Assembly: GCA_030390025.1 (NCBI GenBank)
Contig: CM059427.1
Span: 158,782,001-158,846,000, forward strand
Reading direction: 5' to 3'
Source: Squalus acanthias
Lineage: Eukaryota
Length of the DNA: 64,000 nt
Part shown: one piece after another, positions 26,701 to 64,000 of the stretch
Numbering within the stretch: the first letter of the stretch is position 1
Layout of the letters: every line of letters starts with the position of its first letter
Program-made: the position numbers and the translations under genes
Notes under the pieces: generated by a model
The model's database searches: none
Seen by the model: the letters and a program-made list of their open reading frames with translations, nothing else
Told to the model about the DNA's origin: nothing

Positions 26701-29700
26701 GCTGCTTTGTCCTGGATGGTGTCGAGCTTCTTGAGTGTTGTTGGAGCTGCACTCATCCAGGCAAGTGGAGAGTATTCCATCACACTCTTACTTGTGCCTT
26801 GTAGATGGTGAAAAGGCTTTGGGGAGTCAGGAGGTGAGACACTTGCCGCAGAATACCTAGCCTCTGACCTGTTCTTGTTGCCACAGTATTTATGTGGCCG
26901 GTCCAGTTAAGTTTCTGGTCAATGGTGACCCCCCCCCCCAGGATGTTGATGGTAGGGGATTCGGCGATGGTAATGCCGTTGAATGTCAAGGCTGTGGTTA
27001 GACTCTCGCTTGTTGGAGATAGTCATTGCCTGGCACTTGTGTGGCGCGAATGTTACAAGCCTGAATGTCATCCTTGTCTTGTTGCTTGCGGGCATAGACT
27101 GCTTCATTATCTGAGGAGTTGCAAATGGCACTAAACACTGTGCAGTCATCAGCGAACATCCCCATTTCTGACCTTATGTTGGAGGGAAGGTCATTGATGA
27201 AGCAGCTGAAGATGGTTGGTCCTAGGACACTGCCCTGAGGAACTCCTGCAGTGATATCCTGGGGTTGAGATGATTGACCTCCAACCACCACAACCATCTT
27301 CCTTTGTGGTAGGTATGACTCTAGCCAGTGGAGAGTTTTCCCCCTGATTCCCATTGACTTCAGTTTTACTAGGGCTCCTTGATGTCACACTCTGTCAAAT
27401 GCTGCCTTGATGTCAAGGGCAGTCACTCTCACCTCACCTCTGGAATTCAGCTCCTTTTTCCATGTTTGGGCCAAGGCTGTAATGAGGTTTGGAGCCGAGT
27501 GGTCATCAGTTAGCAGGTTATTGATGAGTAAGTGCCGCTTGATAGCACTGTCGACGACACCTTCCATCGACTGATGGGGCGATAATTGGCCGGATTGGTT
27601 TTGTCCTGCTTTTTGTGGACAGGACATACCTGGGCATATTTCCACATTGTCGGATAGATGCCAGTGTTGTAGCTGTACTGGAACAGCTTGGCTAGAAGCG
27701 CGGCTAGTTCTGGTGCACAAGTCTTCAGCACGACAGCCGGGATGTTGTCGGGGCCCATAGCCTTTGCTGTATCCAGTGCGCTCAGCCGTTTCTTGATATC
27801 ACGTGGAGTGAAAATTGGCTGAAGACTGGCTTCTGTGATGGTGGGGACCTCAGGAGGAGGCCAATATGGATCATCCACTCGGCACTTATGGCTGAAGATG
27901 GTTGCAAACGCTTCAGCTTTGTCTTTTGTACTCATGTGCTGGGCTCCACCATCATTGAGGATGGGGTTATTCATGGAGCCTCCTCCTTCCGTTAGTTGTT
28001 TAATGGTCCACCACCATTCACGACTGGATGTGGCAGGACTGCAGAGCTTTGATCTGACCCGTTGATTGTGGGATAGCTTAGCCCTGTCTATAGCATGCTT
28101 TTTAGCATGCATGTAGTCCTGTGTTGCAGCTTCCCCAGGTTGGTACCTCATTTTTAGGTATGGCTGGTGCTGCTCCTGGCATGCTCTTCTGCACTCCTTA
28201 TTGAACCAGGGTTGGTTCCCTGGCTTGATGGTAATGGTAGAGTGAGGGATATGCCGGGCCATGAGGTTACAGATTATGGTGGAATACAATTCTGCTGCTG
28301 CTGATATCCCACAGCACCTCATGGATGCCCAGTTTTGAGCTGCTAGATCTGTTCTGAATCTGTCCCATTTAGCAGAGTGGTAGTGCCACACAACATGATG
28401 GAGGGTGTCTTCATTGTGAAGACGGAACTTCGTCTCCACAATGACTGCGGTGGTCACTGCTACCAATGCTGTCATGGACAGATGCATCTGCGACAGGTAG
28501 ATTGGTGAGGACGAGGTCAAGTAGGTTTTTCCTTCGTGTTGGTTCTCTCACCACCTGTCGCAGGCCCAGACTGGCAGCTATGTCCTTCAGGACTCGGCCA
28601 GCTCGGTCAGTAGTGGTGCTAAAGTCCCCCACCCAGAGTACATTCTGTGCCCTTCCTACTCTCAGTGCTTCTTCCAAGTGGTGTTCAACATGGAGGAGTA
28701 CTGATTCATCAGCTGAGGGAGGACGGTAGGTGGTAATCAGCAGGAGTTTTCCTTGCCCATGCTTGACCTGAAGCCATGAGACTTCAGCTGTTTCAATTAT
28801 TACGTTTATGCTTGGGAAAGGAGGAAGGAAGAAGAGAGGGAAAGTGTGGTTGCATTTGGGGGAAGGCCAGTAAAAATGTTGTTTAAAAAAAAACGAGTCC
28901 CACATAAGTCTTGTGATGACTATGTGAGAGCATCCCTTTTGCGAGTCAGTACTTGGAACTGAGGTCCTCAACTATATTCCAGATAGATAGGAAACTTGGA
29001 GTCCAATTTAGCATAGAAGCTCCCCTCTACTCCCAGATCATAAGATAAAAGAACTTTTGTGGTGTAGAATTCTTAGGAATACTCCTGTACGATACATCAG
29101 TTGAGCCCCATTGGCTTGTATAGCCAAACAGAAAACATGGGGATCTCCGGGTTTCATAATCTACTCCAGTATTCTTGACAAAACCTTTGTGTTTGGCCAT
29201 TAGTCCAGTGCTGCTTGATGGCCTTTCCAGTTGAGTGATGAGCATAACTGTTGCTGACTTGTCCTTGGACCATTTCAATGCTTGTTGGTGCAGACTTTAG
29301 CACTATCGGAAGAAATTGCCTCAGCTCGAGCATTGATCCAGATCAACTCCAATACCAAGTTCAAATTACCTTTTATATACCCTTCACCCTCTATAGAAAC
29401 ATCCCTTCTTTCCAGCTGTTTTCTCTAAACTTTTTTGAGTTCTTGCTTCACTGTATGAATTAGATTTTTGCTCATTTACTTCCTTTCAGAATGGCTGAAA
29501 TTATATGTAGTGACGGTTTGGAGACAATTGCATCTTTACAGAGCTCCTTTGGGTCATCAAACTCAAAAAGGGCAATGCCCCAGTGTTTCCCACTGCCCAC
29601 CGGTGTTGAGGTTCATGTGGGGCATAACCAGCAGCACAGACCTATAATGTAAATTCTATGTAACACCCCCATCTGAATGACATGAATGAAGGCGATCGTG

Positions 29701-40061: not shown

Positions 40062-42464
40062 AGTCATCGAGTTATACAACACAGAAAGAGGCCCTTCGGC
40101 CCATCGTGTCCGCGCCGGCCATCAAGCCCTGTCTATTCTAATCCCATTTTCCAGCACTTGGTCCATAGCCTTGTATGCTATGGCGTTTCAAGTGTTCATC
40201 TAAATGCTTCTTGAATGTTGTGAGGGTTCCTGCCTCTACCACCCTTTCAGGCAGTGAGTTCCAGATTCCAACCACCCTCTGGGTGAAAAAGCTTTTCCTC
40301 AAATCCCCTCTAAACCTCCTGCTCCTTACCTTGAAACTATGCCCCCTGGTTATTGACCCTTCTACTAAGGGGAAAAGTTCCTTTCTATCTATGCCCCTCA
40401 TAATTTTGTACACCTCAATCAGGTCCCCCCTCAGCCTTCTCTGCTCTAAGGAAAACAACCCCAGCCTGTCCAGTCTCTCTTCATAGCTGAAGCGCTCCAG
40501 CCCAGGTAACATCCTGGTGAATCTCCTCTGCACCCTCTCCAATGCAATCACATCCTTCCTGTAGTGTGGCGACCAGAACTGCACACAGTATTCCAGCTGT
40601 GGCCTAACTAGCGTTTTGTACAGCTCCATCATAACCTCCCTGCTCTTATATTCTATGCCTCGGCTAATGAAGGCAGGTATCCCATATGCCTTTTTAACCA
40701 CCTTATCTACCTGTCCTGCTGCCTTCAGGGATCTATGTACATGCACACCAAGGTCCCTCTGATCCTCTGTCCTTCCAAGGGTCCTACTATTCATTGTGTA
40801 TTCCCTTGCCTTGTTAGTCCTCCCAAAATGCATCACCTCACACTTTTCAGGGTTAAATTCCATTTGCCACTGTTCTGCCCATCTAACCAACCCGTCTATA
40901 TCGTCCTGTAGCCTGAGGCTTCCCTCCTCGCTATTTACCACCCCACCAATTTTTGTGTCATCTGCGAACTTACTGATCATACCTCCTACATTCATATCTA
41001 AATCATTAATGTACACTACAAACAGCAAAGGACCCAGCACCGATCCCTGCGGTACACCACTGGACACAGGCTTCCAGTCACAAAAACAACCTTCGACTAT
41101 CACCCTCTGCCTCCTGCCACTAAGCCAACTTTGGATCCAATGTGCCAAGTTGCCCTGGATCCCATGGGTTCTTACCTTCTTGACCAGTCTCCCATGCGGG
41201 ACTTTGTCAAAAGCCTTACTGAAGTCCATGTAGACCACATCAACTGCACTACCCTCATCCACACACCTAGTCACCCCCTCGAAAAATTCAATCAAATTGG
41301 TCAGACATGATCTCCCCCTGACAAAGCCATGCTGACTATCCTTGATTAATCCTTGCCTCTCCAAGTGGAGACTAATTCTGTCCCTCAGAATTTTTTCCAA
41401 TAATTTCCCTATCACTAATGTTAGGCTCACTGGCCTGTAATTCCCTGGTTTATCCCTACTACCCTTCTTGAATAATGGTACTACATTAGCTGTTCTCCAG
41501 TCCTGTGGCCAGAGAGATTCTGAAAATTTGTGTCAGAGCCCCTGCAATCTCCTCCCTTGCCTTACATAGCAGCCTGGGATACATCTCCTCTGGGCCTGGG
41601 GATTTATCCACTTTTAAGCCCACTAAAACCGCTAGTACCTCCTCCCTCTCAATACTAATTTGTTCAAGTATATCACAATCCCCCTGCCTGATTTCTATGC
41701 CTACATCTTCCTTCTCCATAGTGAACACAGATGCAAAATACTCATTTAAAACCACACCTACATCTTCTGGCTCTACACACAGATTACCACTTTGGTTCCT
41801 AATGGGCCCTACTCTTTCCCTGGTTATCCTCTTGCCCTTAATATACTTATAAAACACCTTGGGATTTTCCTTTATTTTGCCCGCCAGTGTTATTTCATGC
41901 CCCCTCTTTGCTCTCCTAATTTCTTTTTTAAGTACCCTCCCCCCCTCCACTTTCTATACTCCTCTGGAGCTTCCACTGTTTTTAGTACTTTGTATCTGCC
42001 AAAAGCCTCCCTTTTTTTCTTAATCCATTCTCGTATATCCCTTGACATCCAGGGTTCCCTGGGCTTGTTGGTCCCACCCTTGACCTTTACAGGAACATGT
42101 TGCCGTTGTACTCTCTCTATTTCCTTTCTGAAAGACTCCCACTGCTCTGATGTGGATTTTCCTATAAGTAGCTGATCCCAGTCCACTTTGGCCAGATCCT
42201 GCCTTATCATATTAAAATTATCCTTCCCCCAATTTAGAACCTTTATTTCCGGTCCATCTTTGTCCTTTTCCATGACTACCTTAAATCTCACCGAATTATG
42301 GTCACTGTCACCAAAATGCTCTCCTACTAACACTTCTACCACTTGCCCGGCTACATTCCCTAGAATTAGGTCCAGTACCGCCCCCTCTCTTGTAGGACTT
42401 TCTACATGCTGGCTCAAAAAGCTCTCCTGGATGCACTTTAAGAATTCCGCACCCTCTAAGCCTT
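40062..42464 (-). mobile_element. CR1 family B, 5'-truncated, RT largely intact
   Basis: 430-aa ORF 40138-41430 ([23 protein letters not shown]) plus upstream frameshifted ORFs. Confidence 0.95.
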
Positions 42465-48697: not shown

Positions 48698-49720
48698 CTA
48701 CCGAATTAGCCGGACTAAGAATAGACGCAGTCGTTTGGATTTCCGTTGGAGGCCGGAAGGCACGTCTCCTCGGACTGTGTTTTGGTCCCTGGGTCGCTTG
48801 GTTTGTACCAGCGGGCTGGCAGAGTCCGTGTCGCCTTGATCGACCTGAGGGGGACTGGGGAGATCGTGGCTCCGGGTGCGGGTCCCCACCGGCGCAGAGC
48901 TGGCTTCATCCTGCTCAGTAGCCGATGATTGACCGGCGTCCTGGCTTCGGGTGGCCACCCCGAAGGAAGCGCTCTGTTCCCTGGGTTGATCCAGCAGAGT
49001 AGCTGACAGATCCCTTGATATCCCGGGTAGGGCGTCACCCTCAGAGGAGCGCGGAGTATCGGCGTCGTTAATACGGATCTCTCTATCGATTGGGTCCGTG
49101 GGACCAGTTGGGCAGGGAGCCAGATCCCGAAGTGAAACTGTGGACTCCCGGCCATCAGGGTACCGCACGTACGCGTATGTAGGATTGACATCCATTAGTT
49201 CCACCTCGTCGACGAGGGGATCACTCTTGGAGGATCGGATGAATCTTCGGAGCAGCACGGAGCCAGGAGCTGCCAACCATGATGGTAGGGACGTTCCATG
49301 AGTGGAGCGACGCTGGAACCCGAAGAATCGTTCGTGAGGAGTAACATTGGTGGATGTAGAAAGAAGAGACCTGATGGAATGCAACACGTCAGGGAGCATA
49401 GTTTCCCACTGCTGGTCTGGTAGATTGCATGACTTCAGTGTAATACGAACAGCGTTCCAAATGATAGCGTTGTATCTCTCAACCTGTCCGTTTCCAATAG
49501 GATGATATGGTGTCGTTTTACTTGTGGCGATTCCCCGTTGGGAAAGATAACTTTTGAGTTCGCTTGACATGAAGGAGGGACCCCGATCAGAGTGGATGAA
49601 ATTGGCCGTACCGCAAAGGGAAAAGACCTGATCGAGGCATTTGATCACTGTGGAAGTAAGCATATTGGGACAGGGGAAAGCAAAGGGAAAGCGTGAATAT
49701 TCGTCCACCATAGTAAGCAA
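48698..49720 (-). CDS. Gypsy integrase core/C-terminus (partial frame)
   Basis: VDEYSRF, HSDRGPSF, YHPIGNGQVER (DDE). Confidence 0.9.
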   Translation of the reverse strand: MLTMVDEYSRFPFAFPCPNMLTSTVIKCLDQVFSLCGTANFIHSDRGPSFMSSELKSYLSQRGIATSKTTPYHPIGNGQVERYNAIIWNAVRITLKSCNLPDQQWETMLPDVLHSIRSLLSTSTNVTPHERFFGFQRRSTHGTSLPSWLAAPGSVLLRRFIRSSKSDPLVDEVELMDVNPTYAYVRYPDGRESTVSLRDLAPCPTGPTDPIDREIRINDADTPRSSEGDALPGISRDLSATLLDQPREQSASFGVATRSQDAGQSSATEQDEASSAPVGTRTRSHDLPSPPQVDQGDTDSASPLVQTKRPRDQNTVRGDVPSGLQRKSKRLRLFLVRLIR

Positions 49721-49872
49721 GTAGGTGTTTCACGTTGAGGAAGGCAATGGCCCTCTAAAGTCAATGCTGAGTCGCTGCATAGGTTGTGTAGCGTGTATGA
49801 GCGAGCCATCCGACGGACAGAAGAATTGCGGTTTTAATTCCGCGCAAATTCTACAAGTGGAGCATGTACTTT

Positions 49873-51027
49873 TCACGTAGAAAATGGGAGATTTTTAGAT
49901 CGCACAAAGTGCAACATACGGGTAACGCCAGGATGGCATAAGTCAGTATGAAGATCCGCAAGAGTCGAAGTTGACATGGAAGAGCAGAATGCACGCGTGA
50001 GGGTATCCGGGGACACATTATCCTTGCCGGGTCGATACTGTATGGTGTAGCCAAAGGCAGCCAATTCCATCCTCCAGAGCTGTATTTTGTTATTCTTGAT
50101 TTTAGTGCATTTCCGATTATCCAGCATAAAGGCCACTGAGCGCTGATCGGTTATGAGCGTGAAATGGCGACGAGCGAGAAAATTACTCCATTTACGTACT
50201 GCTTCGATGATAGCCGTAGCCTCCTTCTTGACAGGAGGATAATGGAGCTCGCTACCCTGCAAAGTTCTAGACAGAAATGCAACGGGTCGACCGCCTTGAT
50301 TCAAGGTAGCCGAGATCGCCACCTCCGATGCATCGCACTCGACCACGAAAGGGAGATTTTCATCGATGGAATGAAGCGCGGCTTTTTCCAGTTGTTGTTT
50401 GAGGAGGTCGAAAGCTGAAATAGCCCTCGCCTGCAATGGAAATGACTTCGCGTGAAGCAGGGGCTGGATCTTGTCAGAAAAGTGAGGTAGCCACTTCCCA
50501 TAATAGGCGAACATGCCGAGGGCCCGACGAAGAGAGCTGAGATTCGTAGGAGGAGGGAGCTCCTGCAGCGGATGAAGTCGCTCCGGATCCGGTTTGATGA
50601 CACCATTGCCCACCCAGTAGCCAAGGATGTTGACTGATGGTACTGATTTCACAGATTTGGACTCATTTAAGGTTAAGTTGTGACGACGGAGAACGTCAAG
50701 AAATTTCTGGAGGTTGGCATCATGCTCCTTCTGGTCATGACCAGCAATGGTGATATTATCCAGATATGGAAAAGTGCCTGTTAAGTTCTCCTGTTTGACT
50801 AGGCTATCCATTGCCCGTTGAAAGACGACCACCCCATTGGTGACCCCGAATGGAAGGCGACGAAACTGGTAAAGCCGACCATTGGCCTCAAAAGCCGTAT
50901 ACTTTTTGTCAGAGTCCTTTAACAGTACTTGATGGTCTGCGCTCTTTAAGTCAAAAGTTGAAAATACCTTGTAGTTAGCAAGGTTATTGACCATGTCATC
51001 GATGTGTGGTAGTGGGTAGGCATCCAA
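49873..51027 (-). CDS. Gypsy reverse transcriptase / RNase H (partial frame)
   Basis: DAYPLP, KYTAF, LPFG, YLDN, CDAS, TDQRSV motifs. Confidence 0.9.
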   Translation of the reverse strand: MDAYPLPHIDDMVNNLANYKVFSTFDLKSADHQVLLKDSDKKYTAFEANGRLYQFRRLPFGVTNGVVVFQRAMDSLVKQENLTGTFPYLDNITIAGHDQKEHDANLQKFLDVLRRHNLTLNESKSVKSVPSVNILGYWVGNGVIKPDPERLHPLQELPPPTNLSSLRRALGMFAYYGKWLPHFSDKIQPLLHAKSFPLQARAISAFDLLKQQLEKAALHSIDENLPFVVECDASEVAISATLNQGGRPVAFLSRTLQGSELHYPPVKKEATAIIEAVRKWSNFLARRHFTLITDQRSVAFMLDNRKCTKIKNNKIQLWRMELAAFGYTIQYRPGKDNVSPDTLTRAFCSSMSTSTLADLHTDLCHPGVTRMLHFVRSKNLPFST

Positions 51028-51224
51028 GTCGGTATACTGGTTAATAGTTTGCGAGTAATCGATGCAAAGACGTTTCTTGTATTGCTTCAGAGGATTTTTA
51101 ACAACAACGACTTGAGCCCGCCAGGAAGATGAACATGGCTCAATGATACCGTCAGCTAGAAGGCGAGAGATCTCTGCCTCGATAAAGGATAGGTCATCTT
51201 GGCTGAAACGTCATGATTTAGTGG

Positions 51225-52553
51225 CTATGGGCTTACATCGGGGGAAAGATTGGCAAACAAGGAGGGCTCGTCGAGTGAAGCCGCCGAAAGTGCACAAAAC
51301 GGTACTTTGGAAATAGTAAGCTCCGGCTTTGATCCTCCAAACTCGAAAGTGAGTCTTTTGTGTTGTTTTTGGAAATCCTGTCCCAGGAGCACATCACTGC
51401 ATAGGTTTTTGAGCACCCCGAGCCGGGTAGAGAAATAAGTGCGGCCATTGAGAATAAGGTCAACAAGACAAAAGCCAGAAGAGTTAGTGGTCAGTGTCGT
51501 CAGAGCCATTGCAATTTCCCTGTCCGAGGGGTAAATACGCAGTTTTAACTTACTGACAGCCTGCTCACTGATGAAGCTGTCAAAGCTGCATGAGTCGATT
51601 AATGCACTCAAAATGTGCCCATTTACTGAAACCTTTGTGGCTGCATGGGACAGGCTTTGGGGAAAAACAGCTGTGATGGGAGGAGGGGCAGTTTTATCCT
51701 TGACAGCTGTAACATTAGTAGTGGCTCTTGGGGGAGGAGCAGTTTTATAGGGAGCAGCTGTAACCCTGGAAGAGGCTCTTGACTGACATACTTTCGAGAA
51801 GTGACCTTTCTTACTGCAATGATTGCACATTGCATTATGAGCAGGACAAAATTTCCTATAATGAAATGCACCTCCACAGAAGAAACACTTCCTTTTAGAT
51901 TGCCAAGATGCCGCTAGGGTAGGGTCGTCATCAGCTAGGATAGAGTCGTCATCAGTGAGGGCTTCCGCCTGAGGCTTATCGGAGGAGTCACTAAAAGTGA
52001 TAGCAGCAGTCCGTGCACATGGTAAAAGATAGGCATCTGCATTTTTCTTTGCCAAGTCCAGAGAATATGCCTGGTCATAGGCAGCTTGTAACTTGAGGGT
52101 TTTATTCTCCAGCAGACGCTGGCGTATGAAGGGAGACGCAATTCCATTAATAAAAGAATCACGAATTAAGTCCTCCTGGTACTGCTCAGCTGAGACAGCC
52201 TTGAGATTACAATCTTTGCTGAGCCTGCGAAGCTTTTGAAGGAATTTGTCAAGTGATACCCCGGGTTGTTGTCGAGTTGTGGCCAGTAGATGCTGAGCAA
52301 AAATTTCGTTTGGGGCCTTAACATATAGTTGCTGTAGTATTCGGATAACGGAGTCATAGTCTATACAGTCTTCGATATAGTCAAACACATAAGGGGATAC
52401 ATAATTGGCAAGTATCTCTAACTTATCAGGAACATTCTCAGCACACACCCTGAGGAAGTTGCTGAAGGTAAGATACCAGTGTTTCCATACCTTAGCAGTT
52501 GTAGGTGAATTCGGGTCCAGGTCGAGACGGGTGGGTTGGAGTAGTTTCTCCAT
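51225..52553 (-). CDS. Gypsy gag-protease
   Basis: Two Zn knuckles (CFFCGGAFHYRKFC, CNHCSKKGHFSKVC) and aspartic protease motif ALIDSCS. Confidence 0.9.
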   Translation of the reverse strand: MEKLLQPTRLDLDPNSPTTAKVWKHWYLTFSNFLRVCAENVPDKLEILANYVSPYVFDYIEDCIDYDSVIRILQQLYVKAPNEIFAQHLLATTRQQPGVSLDKFLQKLRRLSKDCNLKAVSAEQYQEDLIRDSFINGIASPFIRQRLLENKTLKLQAAYDQAYSLDLAKKNADAYLLPCARTAAITFSDSSDKPQAEALTDDDSILADDDPTLAASWQSKRKCFFCGGAFHYRKFCPAHNAMCNHCSKKGHFSKVCQSRASSRVTAAPYKTAPPPRATTNVTAVKDKTAPPPITAVFPQSLSHAATKVSVNGHILSALIDSCSFDSFISEQAVSKLKLRIYPSDREIAMALTTLTTNSSGFCLVDLILNGRTYFSTRLGVLKNLCSDVLLGQDFQKQHKRLTFEFGGSKPELTISKVPFCALSAASLDEPSLFANLSPDVSP

Positions 52554-53675
52554 GATGGATTGATTACTACGTCTGGTTCCCTTCTACCATTTGAGTCATA
52601 GCCGTCTGTTCCCAAAACCACTCAGAGCGTGGAGCAGGTCCAGTTGATTAAATTGACATAAGAAAACTACTAAGCACTTGGTCTAAGTATTAAACAAAGC
52701 TTTAATCAACTGTTTTTCAACATGGAGATCTAGTTGTGTCCTTCACTAGTTCCTGTTGAGGAATGTCCTAAGCAAGCTGGGCCCATGCCAGTGTATTTAT
52801 ACGCTCCCTGGACAGCGCCACCAGCAGGCCACCCAGTATTACTTCATACAAGATTCATGTCACTCAGTGCATCATCCGTCTCCAAAACAATCATTCAAAG
52901 TGAACTGACTACTGATAGCTACTAGCCTCGGTCCCCTGTACCTAATGGCTCCTGTGCAAACACACATTGAAATGAGAAAACTAATCCTTGGTCAGTATTC
53001 ATTACTCCTCGTAAAAAAAGATGGTTTATTGTGAACAGAACAGACACCAGCAAGCAGTGGGCAATATTTCTTATCCCTCAAACACCGACTCTGCATTGTG
53101 CACTAACAGGCACTAGAATCTGATTGTTTCCAACAATCAGAGGCTGTACATCACCAGCTACTCCCAATTGCTTCCCAGGCCGAGCTCTCTGTTGGAAATA
53201 ATATCCCACAGCCCCTAATGAATCCTCCAGATTTTCACTTGTCTTATCTGAAAAATCACACTCTAGTAATTGGAGCTCTGTTTGGATTCACTATTCCCTG
53301 TAGTTTTCAGCAATTCACCAACCATCTCTTTGTTGTACAATAACTGTGCAGAAGCAGACAATGAAAACTGAAACAAACAAGGGATTCAAGGATCAAGGCA
53401 AACAGACTGTGGTTCATATTTACAATGAGCTGGCTGATTAGAGACCTGGATGGAGGGAGGGGATAAGATATCAACATAGAATTACATAGAATTTACAGCA
53501 CAGAAACAGGCCATTCGCTGATTATCTTTAACATAATGAAAGATTCAAAGAAATCCAAACTTATCCAAGTACAGCGTGTTAGCCCATCAATGCCTGTCTA
53601 TGTACTTCACAGTAATGTGAGCGGCAAAGGCGGGTATATGGAGTTAGGTCACAGATCAGCCATGATCTCATTGAA

Positions 53676-56250: not shown

Positions 56251-56406
56251 CTGTGTTAAAATAGTGGCAACATTTCAACTGTATGTGTAGAGCAGTGAAG
56301 CCAAGCTTCCCTGTCTCGATGCAGGAGGAAGAAGTGGTTTTCTTGTAGATGAGAATAACAACAGCAATAATTAAAAGCAGAACCATCATCCTCAGCAAAA
56401 GGAGAT
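56251..56406 (-). CDS. Transmembrane/proximal cytoplasmic exon (3' part) of Ig-like gene
   Basis: LLLLRMMVLLLIIAVVILIYKKTTSSSC...FNT then G|GTATTG; 5' part separated by a Penelope fragment. Confidence 0.6.
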
Positions 56407-56678
56407 TTGTCCCATTACCATCTCCTTTTGCCTTGCACCATCATCCCTTTCGTCTCTTAATCTCTCCTGCCTTCCATCCGATCACAGACCTTCCCTTTTG
56501 TTCTTTCCTCCCCTGCCCCCTTTCCCTGCCCCTACACTTGCTTAAAAACCTGTTCCATCTCCAGCTTTTTCCAGTTCTGACGAAGGGTCATCGACCTGAA
56601 ACGTTAACTCTGTTTCTCTCTCCACAGATGCTGCCTGACATGCTGAGTATTTCCAGCATTTTCTGTTTTTATTTCAGA
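56407..56678 (+). mobile_element. Penelope-like 3' fragment inserted in the TM exon
   Basis: Aligns with 47120-47380. Confidence 0.75.
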
Positions 56679-56762
56679 CATGTGCAGATAGTAAGATTCT
56701 TTCCAGGGATATTTCCATGTGGCCCAGGTTACTGATTAACTGCCGACTCTCCCGTCCCTTAA

Positions 56763-58135
56763 TACACACACACCCCCCACACACACCCACCCCACCCACA
56801 CACCCCCCTCCACCCACACACACCCACACCCCCCACCCACACACACACCCTCCACCCACACACACACCCCCCCACNNNNNNNNNNNNNNNNNNNNNNNNN
56901 NNNNNNNNNNNNNNNNNNNNNNNNNNNNNNNNNNNNNNNNNNNNNNNNNNNNNNNNNNNNNNNNNNNNNNNNNNNNNNNNNNNNNNNNNNNNNNNNNNNN
57001 NNNNNNNNNNNNNNNNNNNNACACCCCCCCACCCACACACACCCACCCCCCCACCCACACACCCCCCCACCCACACCCACCCCCCCATCCACACCCCCCC
57101 CACCCACCCACACCCACCCCCCCACACCCACCCCCACCCACACAAACACCCCCCCCACACACACCCCCCACCCACACAAACACCCCCCACACACACCCCC
57201 ACCCCCACCCACACCCCCACCCACACACACACACCCCCACCCACACAACCTCACCCCCACTCACCCACACACACACCCCTACCCACACACACCCCCACCC
57301 CCACACTCACCCCCCCACCCACACACAAACACCCCCCACACACACACCCACCCACACACCCCCACCCCCCACACACACAAACTCCCCCCACCCACACACC
57401 CCCACCCCCACCCACACACACACACACCCACCCCCCACCCACACCCCCCACCCACACCCACCCCCCCACCCACACACACACCCACCCACTACCCACACAC
57501 ACACCACACACACACACCACCCCCCCCACCCACACACACCTAGCCCCCACCCACATACCATCCCCCCACCCACACAGCCCACCTCACACGCACCCGCCCC
57601 ACACCCACACTCACCCACCCCCCACCCAGACACACCCAGCCCCACCCACACACACACAGCCCCCACCCACACACAAAGCCCCCCCACCCACACACACCTA
57701 GCCCCCACCCACACAGCACACTTCACACAGCCAATCACATACCCACACACCCACTCACACACTCACACCCACTCCACCCACCACCCCACCCACACACACA
57801 CCCCACTGACACACTCCACCCACACCCACACACACCTCACCGACACACACCCACACACACACCCCACGGACACACACACCCGACTGACACACACACCCCA
57901 CCTATACACACACCCCACTGACACACACACCCCACCCACACACACACCCCACTAACACACACACCCCACTCACACACACACCCCACCCACTCACACACCC
58001 CACTGACACACACACCCCACCCACACACACACCCCACCCACACACACACCCCACTGACACACACACCCCACCCAGGCACACACCCCCACCTACACACACA
58101 CCCCACTCACACACACACACCACATCCAAACACAC
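56763..58135. repeat. C/A-rich (G/T-rich on - strand) low-complexity tandem array containing a 145-N assembly gap (56876-57020)
   Basis: CACACCCCC/CACCCACA repeats seen directly. Confidence 0.97.
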
Positions 58136-58152
58136 ACTAATGTAGATCTTAC

Positions 58153-58470
58153 CCAGATCCTTACTGACAGCTCTCCGAGTCGGCTGATCCAGGGACACGT
58201 GTTTCACTTCACACCAGTAAGTGCGGTTACTCTCCCACACTGCTGTCGGCACAGTGAGCTGGCTCACAGTCCGGTAGGTGCCGTTACTGCCCAAAACCAT
58301 TGCACACTGTGTCACTCCCATATCCACCGGACCAGTCTCATCTCTCCAAGTCACAGAAATATCAACAGGGTAAAAGTCTGACACCAAACAAGTCATTGCA
58401 ACAGTTTGCCCTGCAGGGTCAGTGTCAAGTAAAGGAGAGAAAAGATGGACCACAGGCTGGATGTAACCGT
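58153..58470 (-). CDS. Ig C1-set domain exon 2 (intact)
   Basis: QPVVHLFSP...MTCLVSDFYPVDISVTW...NGTYRTVSQLTVP..VWESNRTYWCEVKHVSL; AG/GT, phase 1-1. Confidence 0.92.
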
Positions 58471-58639
58471 CTACAGCACAGACAGGAACATATCATTAGA
58501 TAAGAGATCAAACAAATATTTACAGCTTTATCACATGCATTAGAGCAAATGTATTTACAGCATGTTAACTGAAGGCAGAGAGCAGTGAGTATCCTGGTAA
58601 AACAGCACCAATAATTTTGTAATAAAGCAGAATGAAGGG

Positions 58640-58775
58640 AATCAAGGGAATCAAGGGATATGGGGATAGGGCAGGGAAAGTGGAGTTGAGCCATGATCTT
58701 ATTGAATGGCGGAGTCGGCTCGAGGGGCCGTATGGCCTATTCCTGTTCCTATTTCTTATGTTCTCATGTTCTTAT
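58640..58775 (+). mobile_element. CR1 3' end fragment
   Basis: GIKGYGDRAGKW motif, 3' UTR and (TTCTTATG)n tail. Confidence 0.8.
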
Positions 58776-60046
58776 GATCAATTAGACGTTAAGACCTCTC
58801 GAAACAGAACATGGTTACGGTTAACATTAGGGCTCATTCTGGTACAACCTGAATACTCCAGCAGCAAGTAAAACACTCAATGGTTCATAAACCATTATAG
58901 CAGACACAGTACAAAGGCGACACAAGCTAATACCGCACCTTATGTTGTGCCTGATAAATAGACTTTGCAGCTATTTAACTAATTAATAAATATTAATAAA
59001 TAAAAATGATAAGCTAAGAGCACAAGGTAGAATGGAGGGAGATAAGGCCTTTCAGCCCATTCTGTTCCTACCAGGTACAACTGACACTGTCACTGACTCT
59101 TCCTAATCTATATGAACTGGTGAGGAAGGTGACTTCCAGGAAGAGAAACTGTCAACTTTCCTCCTGCTCCTGCCTCCCAGAAGATAGAATCATAGAATCA
59201 TAGAGTAAATTGAGTATAAACTCCGAGACATTGATCTAATATTAAAATCTACCTCACTTGAAGTCAATGTATTCGTGGTTGAAATTGCTATGATCCTGAT
59301 AGCCCATCATCCAGTGTTTGGCACAGAATACCTTCCTCTTTTGTCAACACTTAACTGACCAATCTCTATCACAACAAATAATCCTCCAAAAGCTTCCTAA
59401 CTTTGTTAACAAGTACATCTGATAGAAATCTATTTCATAGGAATGTTACTCCATTTTGTAAAATAATAGGAGAATCCACCTTTTATAACTGCCCTGAATA
59501 AAGGCCTATGACCGACTCCACTAGTTCAAGGCAACTGAGTAACTAAATAAAAGGCTTAAGTCTTTTTTACTAACTTTGTTGTTAATAAAGATGACTTCTC
59601 AGAAAAGGGTTTAAAACAGAAAAATAGTCCATTAGCAATTTGTATCCATATTGCTCCACTGTTTATTTACTGCTACGTCTTCACCAATGTTAGTAAAGAG
59701 ATGAATTTATCCCCCATAGGGACAAGAAGGGTTGTAACTGGACAGAGAGGTAAGAGGATTGTTCATTTGCTTTTTCTCCTAGCTTGGAGTTTACAAGTTC
59801 AAGAAAGGTGCTCAGAGTCTCCTCAGATATGGGAATGATATTCCATCCTTGACTAGACTTCGGCCTTTTAGAAAGTGAAGACATGTTAAGGGGTAAATAA
59901 GTGTTTGGCAGGAAAGAGGAAACTGAACTCTTTGGACGAAGTTTTGTCACAATCTGAAAGCAAGATTTTGTGCGTAATTTTAAAACATTTAATTTTAATT
60001 AGGATATATGCAGTAAATAAAAACAAGCACACTGCAGTGTTCTTAC

Positions 60047-60358
60047 CATTTCTTTTCCTCAAACTGTGCCTCATAGGAGATGACAACGTAACATGTTGAA
60101 TTTCACAAGTGTACACAGAGCCAGAGTCCCACTCCCCGACAGCAACTTCACTCACTTCTGGAACTGTAGCTCCATTTGTCTTTAGAACCGGTAGAAGGGT
60201 TTGTGAACTAGAGGCTGACTGATTGTTATTAACCAGCCACCTAAAGGAAATGCTTTCAGGATAAAATCCAACAGCCAGACACACAACTGTTGCTGTCTTC
60301 TTCACATCAATCTCTTCAAAGGTTGTTGGCAAAACATAGATCGATGGTGGAATCGGGT
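60047..60358 (-). CDS. Ig C1-set domain exon 1
   Basis: PPSIYVLP...TATVVCLAVGFYPESISFRW...EWDSGSVYTCEIQHVTL; AG/GT, phase 1-1. Confidence 0.9.
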
Positions 60359-60629
60359 CTAAATGAATAGAGACGGTTATTGCTCAGAATGGTATTGTAC
60401 AGATAATGAGGTGTTTGAACTCAGATAATGGCCAAGAAAGAACTTGCATTTATATGTATAGTGTATTAATCAGGAATGGATCTAGAGATTGTAGTACAGT
60501 GCTTAGCTGCAGCAAAGGTAAGCAAATGGAGTACTGGGTAGCAGATGAAAAGAGGTTGTATTCAAAGACTGCATGGATGAACTACAGAATTTGTTCATCC
60601 CAGTGTGGCATAAGAATAAAACAAAATAG

Positions 60630-62685
60630 GTGACTCAACCGTGGCTAACAAGGGAAATTAGGGATAGCATAAGATCCAAGGAGAGGGCATATAAATTGGC
60701 CAGAAAAAGCAGTAGCCCTGAGGATTGGGAGCAGTTTAGGATTCAACAAAGGAGGACAAAGGGATTAATTAAGAAGGGGAAAATAGAATATGAAAGTAAG
60801 CTTGCTGGGAACATAAAAACTGACTGTAAGAGCTTTTATAGATATGTGAAGAGAAAAAGATTAGTGAAATCAAGTGTAGGTCCCTTGCAGTCAGAAGCGG
60901 GGGAAGTTATAATGGGGAACAAAGAAATGGCAGCCCAATTAAATGCATATTTTGGTTCCGTCTTCACAAAGGAGGACACAAATAACCTCCCAGAGATGTT
61001 GGAGAACATACGGTCTGATGAAAGGGAGGAACTGAAAGAAATTAGTATTTGCAGGGAAATGGTGTTAGGGAAATTGACGGTATTGAAGGCCGATAAATCC
61101 CCAGGGCCTGATAATCTACATCCTAGGGTACTTAAGGAAGTGGCCCTAGAAATAGTAGATGTATTGCTGATCATCTTCCAACATTCGATGGAATCTGGAA
61201 CTGTACCCATGGATTGGAGGGTAGCTAATGTTACCCCTCTATTCAAAAAGGGTGGTAGAGAGAAAGCGGGGAATTACAGACCGGTAAGCCTGACATCGGT
61301 AGTGGGGAAAATGCTAGAGTCCATTATAAAGGATGTAATAGCTGAGCACTTGAAAAACAGTGACAGGATCGGACAAAGTCAACATGGATTTACAAAAGGT
61401 AAATCGTGCTTGACTAATCTACTGGAATTTTTTGAGGATGTAACTGGGAAAATATGTAAGGGAGAACCAGTAGATGTGGTGTATTTGGACTTTCAAAAGG
61501 CTTTCGATAAGGTCCCGCATAAGAGATTAGCGTGTAAAGTTAAGGCACATGGGATTGGGGGCAAGGTATTGACTTGGATAGAGAACTGGTTGGCAGACAG
61601 AAAGCAGAGAGTAGGAATTAATGGGTCTTTTTCCGAGTGGCAAGCAGTGACTAGTGGGGTACCGCAGGGATCGGTCCTTGGAACCCAGCTATTCACAATA
61701 TACATTAATGATCTAGATAAGGGAATTAAATGTAATATCTCCAAGTTTGCAGATGACACAAAGCTGGGTGGGAGTGTGTGCTGCGAGGAGGATACCGAGA
61801 AACTGCAGGATAATCTGGACAGGTTGGGTGAGTGGGCAGAAGCGTGGCAGATGCAATATAACGTGGATAAGTGCGAGGTTATCCACTTTGGTGTCAAAAA
61901 CAGAAAGGCAGACTATTATCTGAATGGCAATAGATTGGGAGAAGGAGAAGTGCAACGAGACCTGGGTGTCCTTGTGCACCAGTCGCTGAAAGTAAGCATG
62001 CAGGTGCAGCAGGCGGTGAAGAAGGCAAATGGTATGTTGGCCTTCATAGCGAAAGGGTTTGAGTATAGGAACAGGGATGTCCTGCTGCAGTTGTACAGGG
62101 CCTTGGTGAGACCACACCTTGAGTACTGTGTGCAGTTTTGGTCGCCTTATCTGAGGAAGGATGTTCTTGCCATGGAAGGAGTTCAGCGAAGATTCACAAG
62201 GCTGATACCTGGGATGGCAGGAATGACATATGAGGAGAGATTGGGTCGATTGGGCTTATACTCACTGGAGTATAGAAGAATGAGAGGGGATCTCATCGAA
62301 ATATATAAAATTCTGACAGGTCTGGACAAACTAGATGCAGGAAGAATGTTCCCGATGGTTGGAGAGTCCAGAACCAGGGGTCATAATCTACGGATAACGG
62401 GTAAACCATTTAGGACAGAAATGAGGAAGAATTTCTTCACCCAGAGAGTGGTGAACCTGTGGAATTCTCTACCACAGAAGGTAGTTGAGGTGAAGTCATT
62501 AAATATATTCAAGGATGAGTTAGATATATTTCTTAAAGCTAAAGGTATCAAGGGATATGGGGAGAAGGCAGGTACAGGGTACTGAGTTTAGATGATCAGC
62601 CATGATCTCATCGAATGGCGGAGCAGGCTCGAGGGGCCGAATGGCCTACTCCTGCTCCTATCTTCTATGTTTCTATGTTTCTATG
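60630..62685 (+). mobile_element. Young 5'-truncated CR1 with an uninterrupted 651-codon RT ORF, nested in an older CR1 within the V-C intron
   Basis: ORF 60630-62585 with NYRPVSL, QHGF, DFQKAFD, PQGSVLG, FADD; no endonuclease domain; (TTCTATGT)n tail. Confidence 0.96.
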
Positions 62686-63301
62686 TATTATTGCTGTATA
62701 AGGCATTGGTTAGATCCAATCTGGAGCATGGTGCACAGTTTGGCTCTTGAAAAGGTACAGTGGTATGAACAATAAAGATGATTTCAGATATCAGGAATTT
62801 ATGATACAAGGTTAAGGAAGTTTGGCTTATTTTCTTTGAAGAAAGACTTCAGGTGACCTCTTTGAAGCTTGAGATTCCGAAGGGACTTGACAAAGCTGAT
62901 CCAGCAAACTGTTCACTGGGGTGCAGGTTCACATACCAGTAGACATAAGTTACAAATCAGGACATTAGGAGTAAAAAGGGAAGTCAGACAAAACTTTTTC
63001 ACTCAAAAGGGTAATGGACTGTAAATTCAGTAAGTTACATGGGAAGGTCATTAAAACGTTTAGCGAGGAGTGATCACATTGTAAGGTGCCGATGGTGAAG
63101 AGGAAACAGATCGACCTCTGCTGACATTTATGACATTTCTCCTCAGCAATTAGATTCCCTCTTGGCTATTTGTACAAAATCGAAACACACTGGTTATATT
63201 TACAATTTCACTACAAATAGTGCACAAGGAAAATATTTCCCTCGGTGTGTGTTAAATATTTGAGATCAGTTATTGTTTCCTTCTGATGAATCCCCACTTA
63301 C

Positions 63302-63646
63302 ATGGTTTTACTTTCAGGGTAGTTCCACATCCGCACCAGTCAGTCTCTTGCTGAAATAATATCTGGTTGTATCCTCCTGTTTCAAGTTGCCAACTTTTAA
63401 AGCAAATTTTCTCCTTTGTTCTGGAAAATTGGGTTGCGATTCCTGACATACGACTAAAGGATGCAGATCCCGGGCTCCAGGACATGAGCCATTTGATTCT
63501 AGAGGTTCCAGGCGGTACATAACCCCACCTTATTAGGCGATCATCTTCATTTCTGCTGGTTAGACATTCCAGTCTCACCGATTGTCCTACTTGACTAATC
63601 ACAGTTGACTGAGTCATTCTCAGATAGGCGTTAGTCAGCACTGGAT
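63302..63646 (-). CDS. VJ-type Ig variable domain exon, light-chain-like
   Basis: RMTQS...VRLEC...IRW...GIATQFS; shifted frame FALKVGNLKQEDTTRYY; back in frame QQETDWCGCGTTLKVKP; T|GTAAGT donor. Confidence 0.85.
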
Positions 63647-63731
63647 CTGAAAAGAAAGGGAGACATAAATGTTCAAGTGAACGCAGATAGGGACAACGAG
63701 GAGAAAAAAAAGTGGGAGATTGGCTTCTTAC

Positions 63732-63768
63732 CCATTTGGATGGCAATCAGAATAAAGGCGCAGAACAT
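63732..63768 (-). CDS. Signal peptide exon of Ig-like gene (MFCAFILIAIQM)
   Basis: ATG, hydrophobic core, G|GTAAG donor, 85-nt intron to V exon. Confidence 0.8.
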
Positions 63769-64000
63769 CCCCAGCTTTTTCAGCTCTAGAGTTGCCCGGT
63801 TAAGCGTTTTTTGATGGCCTAACATCACCAGACTCAAAAGTTCAAGTGAAGTTTTGCTGTTCAGAGGAGGGTGGGTCATGTATTTCCTGGTTGATCATCA
63901 TTTTGAGCAAAGAAGGAACAGGTTGTGAATGAGCTGCTGTTCTGCAGTCCTGGCCTACAGAACTCCAATCCACATCAAACACAACTGTCAACCGGTATCA

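What the first reader, a model, noticed from the sequence alone, without database searches (positions are those of the whole stretch)
56251..63768. Non-rearranging antigen-receptor-like gene: L - VJ - C1 - C1 - TM
Seen: a split leader with an 85-nt intron, then one 345-nt exon in which V and a J-like G strand (WCGCGTTLKVK, cf. FGxGTxLxV) are contiguous around a very short CDR3-equivalent (QQETDW). No RSS heptamer/nonamer or separate D/J segment is visible. Two Ig-type C1 exons and a hydrophobic exon follow, all in phase 1. The V looks light-chain-like (MTQS, GIxxxFS, YY[C]QQ). Established: IgL has one C and no TM, TCR chains have one C, and shark IgM/IgW/IgNAR TM regions end in an IgH-type conserved motif not seen here. 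Non-rearranging VJ-C1 genes (shark UrIg, reported to lack a TM; PRARP) are discussed as relatives of the pre-RAG receptor, and SIRPs share the V-C1-C1-TM layout. Inference: this may belong to an undescribed membrane-bound, non-rearranging Ig/TCR-like receptor family of cartilaginous fish.
Basis: partly seen in the sequence, partly recalled or inferred. Interest (0 to 1): 0.85.

Follow-up and report, generated by a model that had tools for sequence, protein, structure and literature searches.

The report
Decayed copy of third UrIg-type gene
This is a broken shark copy of a non-rearranging antibody-like membrane receptor gene; it belongs to the recently described UrIg family, in a third branch that no paper I could search has named.

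Summary
On the minus strand there is a split leader (ATG 63768, 85-nt intron), a 345-nt exon with V and J joined, no RSS, two C1-set exons and a hydrophobic exon. The assembly gap lies inside an intronic tandem array and touches no exon.

The family is not undescribed. The best matches are UrIg2 (PDB 9DMX; Flajnik et al. 2025, PMC12227049) and UrIg. UrIg2 is already known to be membrane-bound.

By trees and by accession numbers the window groups with neither published gene. It groups with a third set of shark gene models: Mustelus, two Scyliorhinus species, Chiloscyllium and Rhincodon. RefSeq calls the named ones 'immunoglobulin kappa light chain-like'. Their layout is VJ-C1-(C2)-C3-TM. Whale shark and bamboo shark carry all three genes. 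Four literature searches found no name for this third branch.

The window's copy looks like a pseudogene:
- two compensating frameshifts in V, with loss of the canonical cysteine, confirmed in independent DNA contigs;
- a scrambled strand in the C2-type exon;
- no C1 exon, and a LINE element in that intron;
- a doubtful acceptor for the TM exon.

A 92-96% identical paralogue is spliced and expressed. Other first-reader notes place 'VJ + 7 C1 + TM' genes on other DNA of this genome; I did not check them.

The parts
63732..63768 (-). Leader exon 1 (MFCAFILIAIQM-G), donor G|GTAAGA
   Evidence: Similar to the leaders of P0003 and P0016.
63647..63731 (-). Leader intron, 85 nt
   Evidence: DNA contigs of runs X1 and X2 carry two extra A at 63703, inside this intron.
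63302..63646 (-). Single VJ exon, 345 nt, phase 1. Open reading frame throughout, but the ancestral frame is left and regained.
   Evidence: PDB 9dmx_A UrIg2 E 2e-15. phmmer gives 15 hits in 1.84e9 proteins.
63347..63416 (-). Stretch bounded by two compensating 1-nt frameshifts. The E-F strand motif (KFALKVGNLKQEDTTRYY) is readable only in another frame, and the canonical Cys is absent.
   Evidence: The Cys is conserved in 14 of 14 aligned relatives. Contigs X1 record 8 and X2 record 23 show no indel in the exon.
60560..62660 (+). LINE-type retroelement with an intact 651-aa RT ORF (60630-62582), inserted in the V-to-C intron where relatives have a C1 exon
   Evidence: Pfam RVT_1 E 1.5e-32. 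Repeat borders come from the depth jump and the loose ends at 60560 and 62660/62661.
60047..60358 (-). C2-type C1-set exon, 312 nt, phase 1-1. About 8 codons (GATVPEVSE) are scrambled by three 1-nt gaps relative to the paralogue.
   Evidence: Pfam C1-set E 4.2e-15. 64% identity to P0004 C2 and 78% to P0005. Tree support 97/92*. Insertions at 60147, 60149 and 60171 in paralogue contigs.
58153..58470 (-). C3-type C1-set exon, 318 nt, phase 1-1
   Evidence: Pfam C1-set E 4.6e-20. 71-75% identity to the C3 of P0001 and P0004. Tree support 98/89*. The best single-domain PDB match is UrIg2 C3, 54.7 bits.
56764..58137 (.). C/A-rich tandem array in the C3-to-TM intron, containing the assembly gap 56876-57020
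   Evidence: N run located.
56251..56421 (-). TM exon (...LLLLRMMVLLLIIAVVILIYKKTTSSSCIETG...). The 3' donor is CAG|GTATTG. The 5' border is uncertain.
   Evidence: Against a 6.9-kb sub-database, 5 of 5 family tails hit 56404/56380..56300, E 8.5e-8 to 4.6e-5. 7 of 11 family queries hit it in the whole window. Acceptor phases.
53249..53308 (-). Possible remnant of a cytoplasmic exon, with two in-frame stops and no AG acceptor. Low confidence.
   Evidence: 65% identity over 20 aa to P0004 residues after the TM, E 1.6e-4 in a 6.9-kb sub-database. Sequence read.

Best explanation
The locus is a decaying duplicate, most likely a pseudogene, of a gene in the UrIg family of elasmobranch non-rearranging antibody-like genes. 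It falls in a third lineage, distinct from the published MHC-linked UrIg and from UrIg2.

Intact members of this lineage encode a split leader, one germline VJ exon, two or three C1-set domains (C1, optional C2, C3), one TM helix and a short tail.

Inferred from the UrIg2 crystal structure: they would sit in the membrane as disulfide-linked homodimers, held by the conserved Cys-x-Cys in the V-domain G strand, with an Fc-like C2-C3 stalk. They would act as invariant, innate-type receptors or adhesion molecules rather than clonally diverse antigen receptors.

The window's copy has lost the C1 exon, its V and C2-type exons are scrambled by indels, and its TM exon may no longer splice in frame. 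A closely related intact paralogue elsewhere in the genome is the expressed one.
For: Family:
- The V exon hits UrIg2 9dmx_A at E 2e-15; the next PDB chain is at 4e-4.
- The C exons align to UrIg2 C2 and C3.
- Only 15 of 1.84e9 representative proteins reach E 1e-3. Of these, 12 are UrIg-family proteins by name, accession or tree.

Third lineage:
- The paper's accessions map as follows. UrIg GCC18650.1 is P0034. UrIg2 XP_048449493.1 is P0007 and XP_051865846.1 is P0008.
- The window's nearest relatives are different models: XP_078087760.1, XP_038651300/1, GCB72096.1, GCB72098.1, GCC32115.1 and a Rhincodon model.
- Rhincodon and Chiloscyllium punctatum each have all three genes.
- In Rhincodon, V identity is 37% (third branch vs UrIg2), 38% (third branch vs UrIg) and 38% (UrIg2 vs UrIg).
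- In the C-domain tree the window's exons sit in the third branch's C2 set (97/92*) and C3 set (98/89*).
- In the V-C1 tree the third branch has support 86/97 and UrIg2 100/99*. Forcing P0004 into UrIg2 is rejected, AU p 0.0001.

Decay:
- V has two frameshifts and lacks the Cys. Both are present in DNA contigs from two studies.
- There are three 1-nt gaps in the C2-type exon.
- 0 of 9 family models that contain a C1 domain find a C1 exon in the window.
- The TM acceptor has a phase problem.

Paralogue:
- Run X11 record 9 (743 nt) joins a Ca-like exon to a Cb-like exon. Its matched stretches stop exactly at both donor sites (60047 and 58153) and begin one base above the Ca exon's first base, at 60359.
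- The Cb-like piece starts at 58458; the first 12 nt of that exon are replaced by 15 unaligned letters.
- The record differs from the window at 13 letters plus 3 gaps, and at 24 letters, in the two exons.

Dimer motif: the second G-strand Cys is present in 14 of 14 relatives. The first is present in 9 of 9 third-branch and UrIg2 rows. The paper reports V-V disulfides at residues 112 and 114 (passage seen).
Against: - All four exons remain open. The indels cancel to multiples of three in both V and C2, which by my rough estimate would happen by chance only a few times in 100. Some constraint on the ORF, or a functional odd protein, is not excluded.
- I have no RNA evidence for or against expression of this copy. 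X11 is small, and calling it RNA is a guess.
- V-only trees are weak. Monophyly of the third branch is 85/93 and 63/88. The AU test does not reject placing the window's 77-aa V piece with UrIg2 (p 0.10).
- The branching order of the three lineages is unresolved (AU p 0.17-0.23). The third branch could therefore be a fast-evolving, galeomorph-specific UrIg2 duplicate rather than an ancient paralogue.
- The trees contain only 1-2 IgH outgroups and no IgL, TCR or SIRP sequences.
- I did not see the sequence of the paper's catshark UrIg2 (XP_038644097.1), the paper's supplement, or the 2023 UrIg paper (not held).
- The dimer and function statements are inferred, not tested.
Confidence: 0.68

Rival explanations
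1. The copy is a functional gene. The compensated frameshifts are tolerated or selected, giving a receptor with an unusual V domain (no canonical disulfide) on a C2-C3-TM stalk.
For: There are no stop codons in any of the four exons. Net indels are multiples of three in V and C2. The splice sites of the leader, V and both C exons are intact.
Against: The most conserved V motif and the Cys, present in 14 of 14 relatives, are destroyed. The E strand of C2 is scrambled. The C1 exon is absent. The only TM acceptor with a pyrimidine tract is out of phase and gives an immediate TGA. The one spliced contig seen carries the paralogue's letters at every variant site listed for X11.
Confidence: 0.12
2. 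It is simply this species' UrIg2, or a recent lineage-specific UrIg2 duplicate. On this view the 'third lineage' is an artefact of fast evolution.
For: The Cys-x-Cys G-strand motif and the TM are shared with UrIg2 and not with UrIg. The best trees put the third branch next to UrIg2, though weakly (64/70 and 66/49). The paper calls UrIg2 divergent and plastic. The third branch was found only in galeomorph sharks.
Against: Rhincodon and Chiloscyllium hold both genes, and the paper's UrIg2 accessions fall in the other clade. AU rejects placing P0004 with UrIg2 (p 0.0001). The third branch's C1 groups with UrIg C1 (96/87*). Third-branch versus UrIg2 V identity is 31-47%, against 47-64% within UrIg2. 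Unchecked first-reader notes place a VJ + 7 C1 + TM gene on other pieces of this genome.
Confidence: 0.15
3. One reading: a member of a wholly undescribed membrane-bound non-rearranging Ig/TCR-like family.
For: RefSeq names for the relatives are generic ('immunoglobulin kappa light chain-like', 'uncharacterized'). No paper found names this lineage.
Against: There is clear collinear homology to UrIg2 over four domains (E 2.3e-77). The C domains show positional orthology with UrIg and UrIg2. The same VJ single-exon design and the same G-strand motif are present.
Confidence: 0.03
4. A germline-joined IgL (kappa-like) cluster gene, or a SIRP-type V-C1-C1-TM receptor.
For: The N-terminus is kappa-like (MTQS). 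Fab light chains are the next PDB hits for V (E 4e-4 and weaker). The exon layout in this window mimics SIRP.
Against: There are several C exons plus a TM. V is far closer to the UrIg family. No SIRP chain is among the 60 best PDB matches listed for any exon or for P0004. Intact relatives are V-C1-C2-C3-TM.
Confidence: 0.02

Closest known systems
UrIg2 (Flajnik et al. 2025, Sci Adv, PMC12227049; PDB 9DMX)
   Same: Split leader. One-exon VJ without RSS. G strand D(W/F)CxCG. C1-set domains with positional C1/C2/C3 types. A TM plus a short tail. It is the best PDB match for V and for the C3-type exon.
   Different: A separate clade. V identity is 31-47%. Intact relatives have 2-3 C domains, against 9-11 in nurse and epaulette shark UrIg2. 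The accessions and gene models differ in the same species. The window's copy is broken.
UrIg (MHC-linked; Flajnik et al. 2023 J Immunol, not seen; Kondo et al. 2023, not seen; accessions)
   Same: VJ plus three C1-type domains, as in P0004. The third branch's C1 domain is sister to UrIg C1 (96/87*).
   Different: UrIg is reported as secreted only and conserved in V (about 80% per the paper; 71-96%). Here there is a TM exon, V is 33-44% identical to UrIg V, and the G strand has Cys where UrIg has Ser.
SIRP family (V-C1-C1-TM); the comparison rests on recall plus PDB ranking
   Same: The apparent exon layout in this window, and a J-like G strand in a non-rearranging V.
   Different: There is no sequence affinity in any search. 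The layout here results from loss of a C exon.
Germline-joined shark IgL genes
   Same: V and J fused in the germline. Kappa-like framework 1. RefSeq's automatic name for the relatives.
   Different: Several C exons and a TM. The V clusters with UrIg-family V domains and not with immunoglobulin V domains.

Membership tests
UrIg family (UrIg + UrIg2, sensu PMC12227049) | Split leader and a single exon encoding V and J, with no RSS | tested here: met
UrIg family (UrIg + UrIg2, sensu PMC12227049) | V followed by C1-set domains that are positional homologues of UrIg/UrIg2 C1, C2 and C3 | tested here: met
   Pfam C1-set. The window's exons fall in the C2-type and C3-type groups of the domain tree. 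The C1-type exon is missing from this copy.
UrIg family (UrIg + UrIg2, sensu PMC12227049) | The closest sequence relatives are UrIg/UrIg2 rather than rearranging Ig/TCR | tested here: met
   The V tree separates all three groups from IgH V at 99/98* (only two outgroup rows).
UrIg2 proper | V and C domains inside the clade of the published UrIg2 accessions | tested here: not met
   The UrIg2 clade (100/99*) excludes the third branch. AU p 0.0001 for P0004. For the window's short V piece alone the test is inconclusive (p 0.10). The window's C exons are excluded with starred support.
UrIg2 proper | In sharks, many C domains with duplicated, homogenised C2/C3 units (9 in nurse shark, 11 in epaulette shark) | tested here: not met
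   There are two C exons in the window and no further Ig exon in 64 kb. Relatives have 2-3 C domains.
UrIg2 proper | Transmembrane and cytoplasmic region | tested here: met
   The TM exon is homologous to that of relatives. Similarity to the UrIg2 TM is weak.
UrIg2 proper | Linkage to the IgH / TCR-alpha-delta / PSMB5 complex | tested here: inconclusive
   No other Ig exon was found in the window by tblastn with the gene's own exons. ORFs of 90 aa or more that I recognised or tested are transposon-type or belong to a matrin-type zinc-finger gene.
UrIg (MHC-linked) | Highly conserved V (about 80% between species) and a secreted form only | tested here: not met
   V identity to UrIg is 33-44%. 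A TM exon is present. In Chiloscyllium punctatum UrIg is GCC18650.1, while the window's relative is GCC32115.1.
Immunoglobulin light chain (germline-joined) | One C exon, no TM, V within an IgL isotype clade | tested here: not met
   Two C exons plus a TM. The IgL clade test was not run, because no IgL sequences were available to the trees.
SIRP | Sequence affinity of V and C1 domains to SIRP domains | tested here: not met
   No SIRP chain is among the 60 best PDB matches listed. No tree with SIRPs was made.

The most novel reading that the evidence does not exclude
The clade to which this locus belongs is a third, old paralogue of UrIg and UrIg2, in effect a 'UrIg3'. It exists as two sub-lineages, VJ-C1-C3-TM and VJ-C1-C2-C3-TM, that predate the split between orectolobiform and carcharhiniform sharks. 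It is membrane-bound with only three C domains, which is close to the four-domain precursor that Flajnik et al. postulate. It may lie outside both the MHC and the IgH/TCR complex. If so, it adds a third data point for dating the pre-RAG receptor against the genome duplications.
Probability: 0.4. Interest if true: 0.7.

Novelty: new member of a known kind. Interest (0 to 1): 0.5.

Why it matters
UrIg and UrIg2 are the current candidates for relatives of the V gene that the RAG transposon invaded. The published argument rests on there being two paralogues, one in the MHC and one in the antigen-receptor complex.

A third lineage is present in at least five shark species and is roughly as distant from the other two as they are from each other. 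It would need a place in that scheme. Its chromosomal position could test the two-rounds-of-duplication model, and its short membrane form is a simpler protein to study.

The window's own copy matters less. It shows that the family duplicates and decays, and that automatic annotation hides the family under 'kappa light chain-like'.

Tried and rejected
- More Ig exons in the window: tblastn with the window's own exons and with 11 family proteins found none. No C1-type exon was found.
- RSS: none near V.
- A deletion inside the TM segment, my first reading: dropped, because an ungapped alignment to P0016 and P0019 covers the whole helix.
- A mutated donor after the conserved ...ETG codon: this cannot be decided from protein models alone, so I do not claim it.
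- Cytoplasmic exon at 53308-53249: only a weak match with two stops and no acceptor. Kept as low confidence.
- Matrin-3 synteny: Pfam found nothing in the three candidate exons. The Atlas gave only matrin-type zinc-finger leads with scores under 0.9, so 'Matrin-3' is not confirmed. Synteny could not be tested.
- Branching order of the three lineages: AU tests did not decide it.
- I did not build or search a joined (spliced) protein model. Every search and tree row for the window was a single exon or a single in-frame piece of the V exon.
- The supplement of PMC12227049 (figs S1-S2, table S1) was not open to me. It may show catshark loci or further UrIg2-like genes that bear on the 'third lineage' claim.

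Full report
**Anatomy.** The gene runs on the minus strand.
- The ATG is at 63768. A 37-nt leader exon ends in G|GTAAGA.
- The leader intron is exactly 85 nt.
- The next exon (63646-63302, 345 nt, donor GTAAGT) holds a V domain. With no break it also holds a J-like G strand, ...QQETDWCGCGTTLKVKP.
- Two C1-set exons follow at 60358-60047 (312 nt) and 58470-58153 (318 nt). Both have AG/GT sites and are in phase 1. Pfam C1-set scores are E 4.2e-15 and 4.6e-20.
- A hydrophobic exon ends at the donor at 56251.
- I found no RSS. The exact consensus gives 0 matches in the window. A relaxed scan gives one match, 50 kb away, and there is no heptamer within 63200-63800.

**The gap.** The N run 56876-57020 lies inside one C/A-rich tandem array. 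The array runs 56764-56875 and 57029-58137, with a period of 17-19. It begins 16 nt after the second C exon's donor. The gap is intronic, so no frame crosses it. Continuity across it cannot be shown. The exon order on the two sides, C3-type then TM, is that of intact relatives.

**Identity.**
- Against all PDB sequences, the V exon matches one entry strongly: 9dmx_A 'UrIg2 V-C1-C2-C3', E 2e-15. The alignment includes DWCGCGTTLKVK against DFCSCGTTLKVQ. The next chain, a Fab light chain, is at 4e-4.
- The first C exon aligns best to UrIg2 residues 241-327 (C2). The second aligns to 368-447 (C3, 54.7 bits), which is its best single-domain match.
- A phmmer search of 1.84 billion representative proteins with the V exon gave only 15 hits at E 1e-3 or better. 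I did not examine three of them (P0006, P0010, P0014; long multi-domain proteins). The other 12 are UrIg-family proteins.
- I read the abstract and sections 7 and 19 of PMC12227049, plus passages found by term. The paper describes UrIg as MHC-linked, VJ plus three C1-type domains, and secreted only. It describes UrIg2 as VJ plus nine C1-type domains with a TM/cytoplasmic region in nurse shark, and 11 C domains in epaulette shark. UrIg2 is linked to the IgH/TCR-alpha-delta complex and is 'highly plastic'.
- So the family is known, and a membrane-bound member is known.

**A third lineage.** I used accession look-ups against the paper's accession list.
- UrIg: P0034 is GCC18650.1, the paper's UrIg. 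It clusters with P0033 (Rhincodon), P0031 (Triakis, BDZ28909.1), P0032 and P0011.
- UrIg2: P0007 is XP_048449493.1 and P0008 is XP_051865846.1, both the paper's UrIg2. P0009, P0012, P0015 and P0022 go with them. P0022 is XP_041031359.1, the accession next to the paper's great white shark UrIg2.
- The window's nearest relatives are other models:
  - P0001, XP_078087760.1, Mustelus asterias
  - P0016 and P0017, XP_038651300/1, Scyliorhinus canicula (the paper's catshark UrIg2 is XP_038644097.1)
  - P0018-21, P0002 and P0005, S. torazame, including the neighbouring models scyTo_0006167 and scyTo_0006168 on one contig
  - P0003, Rhincodon
  - P0004, GCC32115.1, Chiloscyllium punctatum
- Rhincodon and C. 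punctatum thus have all three genes.
- Identity of the window's exons to this set is 64-78% for the first C exon and 71-75% for the second. Against UrIg2 or UrIg domains it is 25-40%.
- V identities: within UrIg 71-96%; within UrIg2 47-64%; within the third set 37-90%; between sets 31-47%. In Rhincodon the three pairwise values are 37, 38 and 38%.
- The intact P0004 aligns in one stretch with UrIg2 V-C1-C2-C3 (E 2.3e-77).

**Trees.**
- C-domain tree (53 rows; I left out the later repeat domains of P0009 and P0022, domain hits shorter than 76 residues, and all of P0024): domains group by position. The window's exons lie in the third set's C2 group (97/92*) and C3 group (98/89*). The third set's C1 is sister to UrIg C1 (96/87*).
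- V trees, using only the window's 77-81-aa in-frame N-terminal piece: there are three groups. UrIg2 has 100/99* or 99/96. UrIg has 94/91. The third set with the window has 85/93 but only 63/88.
- The AU test does not reject the window's short piece going with UrIg2 (p 0.10).
- On contiguous V-C1 segments (13 rows, 228 columns) the third set has 86/97. Forcing P0004 into UrIg2 is rejected (p 0.0001).
- The order of the three lineages is unresolved (p 0.17-0.23).
- Two sub-lineages appear. One holds Chiloscyllium plus S. torazame b (99/99*); its most complete model, P0004, is VJ-C1-C2-C3-TM. The other holds Mustelus plus the Scyliorhinus a models and is VJ-C1-C3-TM.
- Outgroups were only one or two IgH chains. 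No IgL, TCR or SIRP sequence was available to the trees.

**State of this copy.**
- V exon. The exon is open in its own frame. The E-F strand motif KFALKVGNLKQEDTTRYY is readable only in another frame, between two 1-nt shifts near 63416-63402 and 63361-63347. The canonical Cys, present in 14 of 14 aligned relatives, is gone.
- These shifts are not assembly errors. DNA contigs from two studies cover the exon. They are X1 record 8 (1083 nt) and X2 record 23 (746 nt). Each shows just two gap letters, which the AA insertion at 63703 in the leader intron accounts for. One of the two runs may be the assembly's own sample.
- C2-type exon. Paralogue contigs carry single-base insertions at 60147, 60149 and 60171. 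At 60147 and 60149 the remaining depth in X1 agrees with the window. The window therefore reads ...NGATVPEVSEVAV... where P0004 and P0005 read ...NGSYSSRSELTVAV and ...NGSYTSRSG.
- C1 exon. None of the 9 family models with a C1 domain finds a C1 exon. That intron holds a LINE with an intact RT ORF.
- TM exon. The core LLLIIAVVILIYKKTTSSSCIET is 83% identical to P0005. Five of 5 family tails hit it (E 8.5e-8 to 4.6e-5 in a 6.9-kb sub-database). However, the acceptor with a pyrimidine tract (exon start 56390) is out of phase and gives a TGA at once. The in-phase AGs (56421, 56424) have purine-rich upstream sequence.
- Cytoplasmic exon. A weak match to P0004's cytoplasmic part at 53308-53249 has two stops.

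**The paralogue.** In run X11 (same organism code; RNA by guess) a 743-nt contig lies on 60359-60047 and on 58458-58153.
- Its matched stretches end exactly on both donor sites, so the intron between the two C-type exons is removed.
- It has 15 letters where the window has 12, which fits the extra Glu codon of the relatives (DGYIQEP).
- It differs at 13 letters plus 3 gaps, and at 24 letters, in the two exons. X11 shows the same variant letters as the X1 contig over the second C exon.
- That X1 contig has depth 71, and the variant contig over the first C exon has depth 26. Contigs that match this locus have depths of 11-18.

So a closely related copy, probably several, exists and is spliced. 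I saw no transcript with this copy's own letters. X11 is small, so that is not evidence of silence.

**How the family probably works (inferred).** The G strand keeps Cys-x-Cys in 9 of 9 third-set and UrIg2 rows. UrIg has Ser-x-Cys. In the UrIg2 crystal these two cysteines form V-V disulfides, and C2-C3 pairs like an Fc (passages). I therefore expect intact members to be membrane-anchored, disulfide-linked homodimers with an invariant V. One S. torazame model (P0005) has a tail containing SVYQNV, which looks ITIM-like. I recognise that motif from memory, not from a test. Tissue expression is unknown.

**Literature.** Searches for UrIg, for UrIg2, for UrIg3 / UrIg-like / UrIg family, and for UrIg + shark + nonrearranging returned the 2025 paper and papers that merely cite it. 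None names a third paralogue.

**Other notes of this scan.** Unchecked first-reader notes on other pieces of the same genome describe 'VJ + 7 C1 + TM + tail' genes (s1-888224, s1-890135). These would fit UrIg2 proper lying elsewhere. I did not test them.

**Verdict.** The locus is a damaged duplicate within a known family. It points to an apparently unnamed third UrIg lineage, whose intact members are already in public protein sets under generic names.

Noticed in passing
window 60560-62660 (+): A LINE-type element with an uninterrupted 651-aa ORF (RVT_1, E 1.5e-32). It is extremely abundant in all four runs laid, with summed contig depth in the millions. It sits in the V-to-C intron.
   Followed up: partly
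window 48701-52583 (-): An LTR-retrotransposon-like block with long ORFs: aspartyl protease (51228-52583), RT plus RNase H (49876-51210) and integrase (48701-49729). It lies just downstream of the possible cytoplasmic exon remnant.
   Followed up: partly
Pfam found nothing. The Atlas gave AKAP95, ZNF326 and matrin-type leads, all scoring under 0.9. The gene is convergent with the UrIg-type gene.
   Followed up: partly
window 63302-63646 and 60047-60358: Five single-base indels cancel to multiples of three within two exons and create no stop codon, so the whole gene stays open despite the damage. This could be chance (my rough estimate is a few in 100), gene-conversion patches, or residual selection on the ORF.
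   Followed up: no
window 56430-56700 (+): A sequence with the look of an elasmobranch SINE (recognised from memory only) abuts the 5' side of the TM exon. It may explain the poor acceptor there.
   Followed up: no
P0005 (S. torazame GCB72098.1), C-terminal tail: The cytoplasmic tail holds SVYQNV and YYKV, which look like ITIM-type motifs. This hints that one sub-lineage may be an inhibitory receptor. The gene model is incomplete, so the tail may be mispredicted.
   Followed up: no
P0002 (S. torazame XP_072368086.1): RefSeq 'isoform X4' reads from the VJ exon straight into reverse-transcriptase-like sequence. TE insertions next to the V exon therefore occur in another species' locus too.
   Followed up: no
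window 40141-41532, 27513-28547, 15870-17530 and others: Many further RT-bearing LINE fragments lie on both strands.
   Followed up: no
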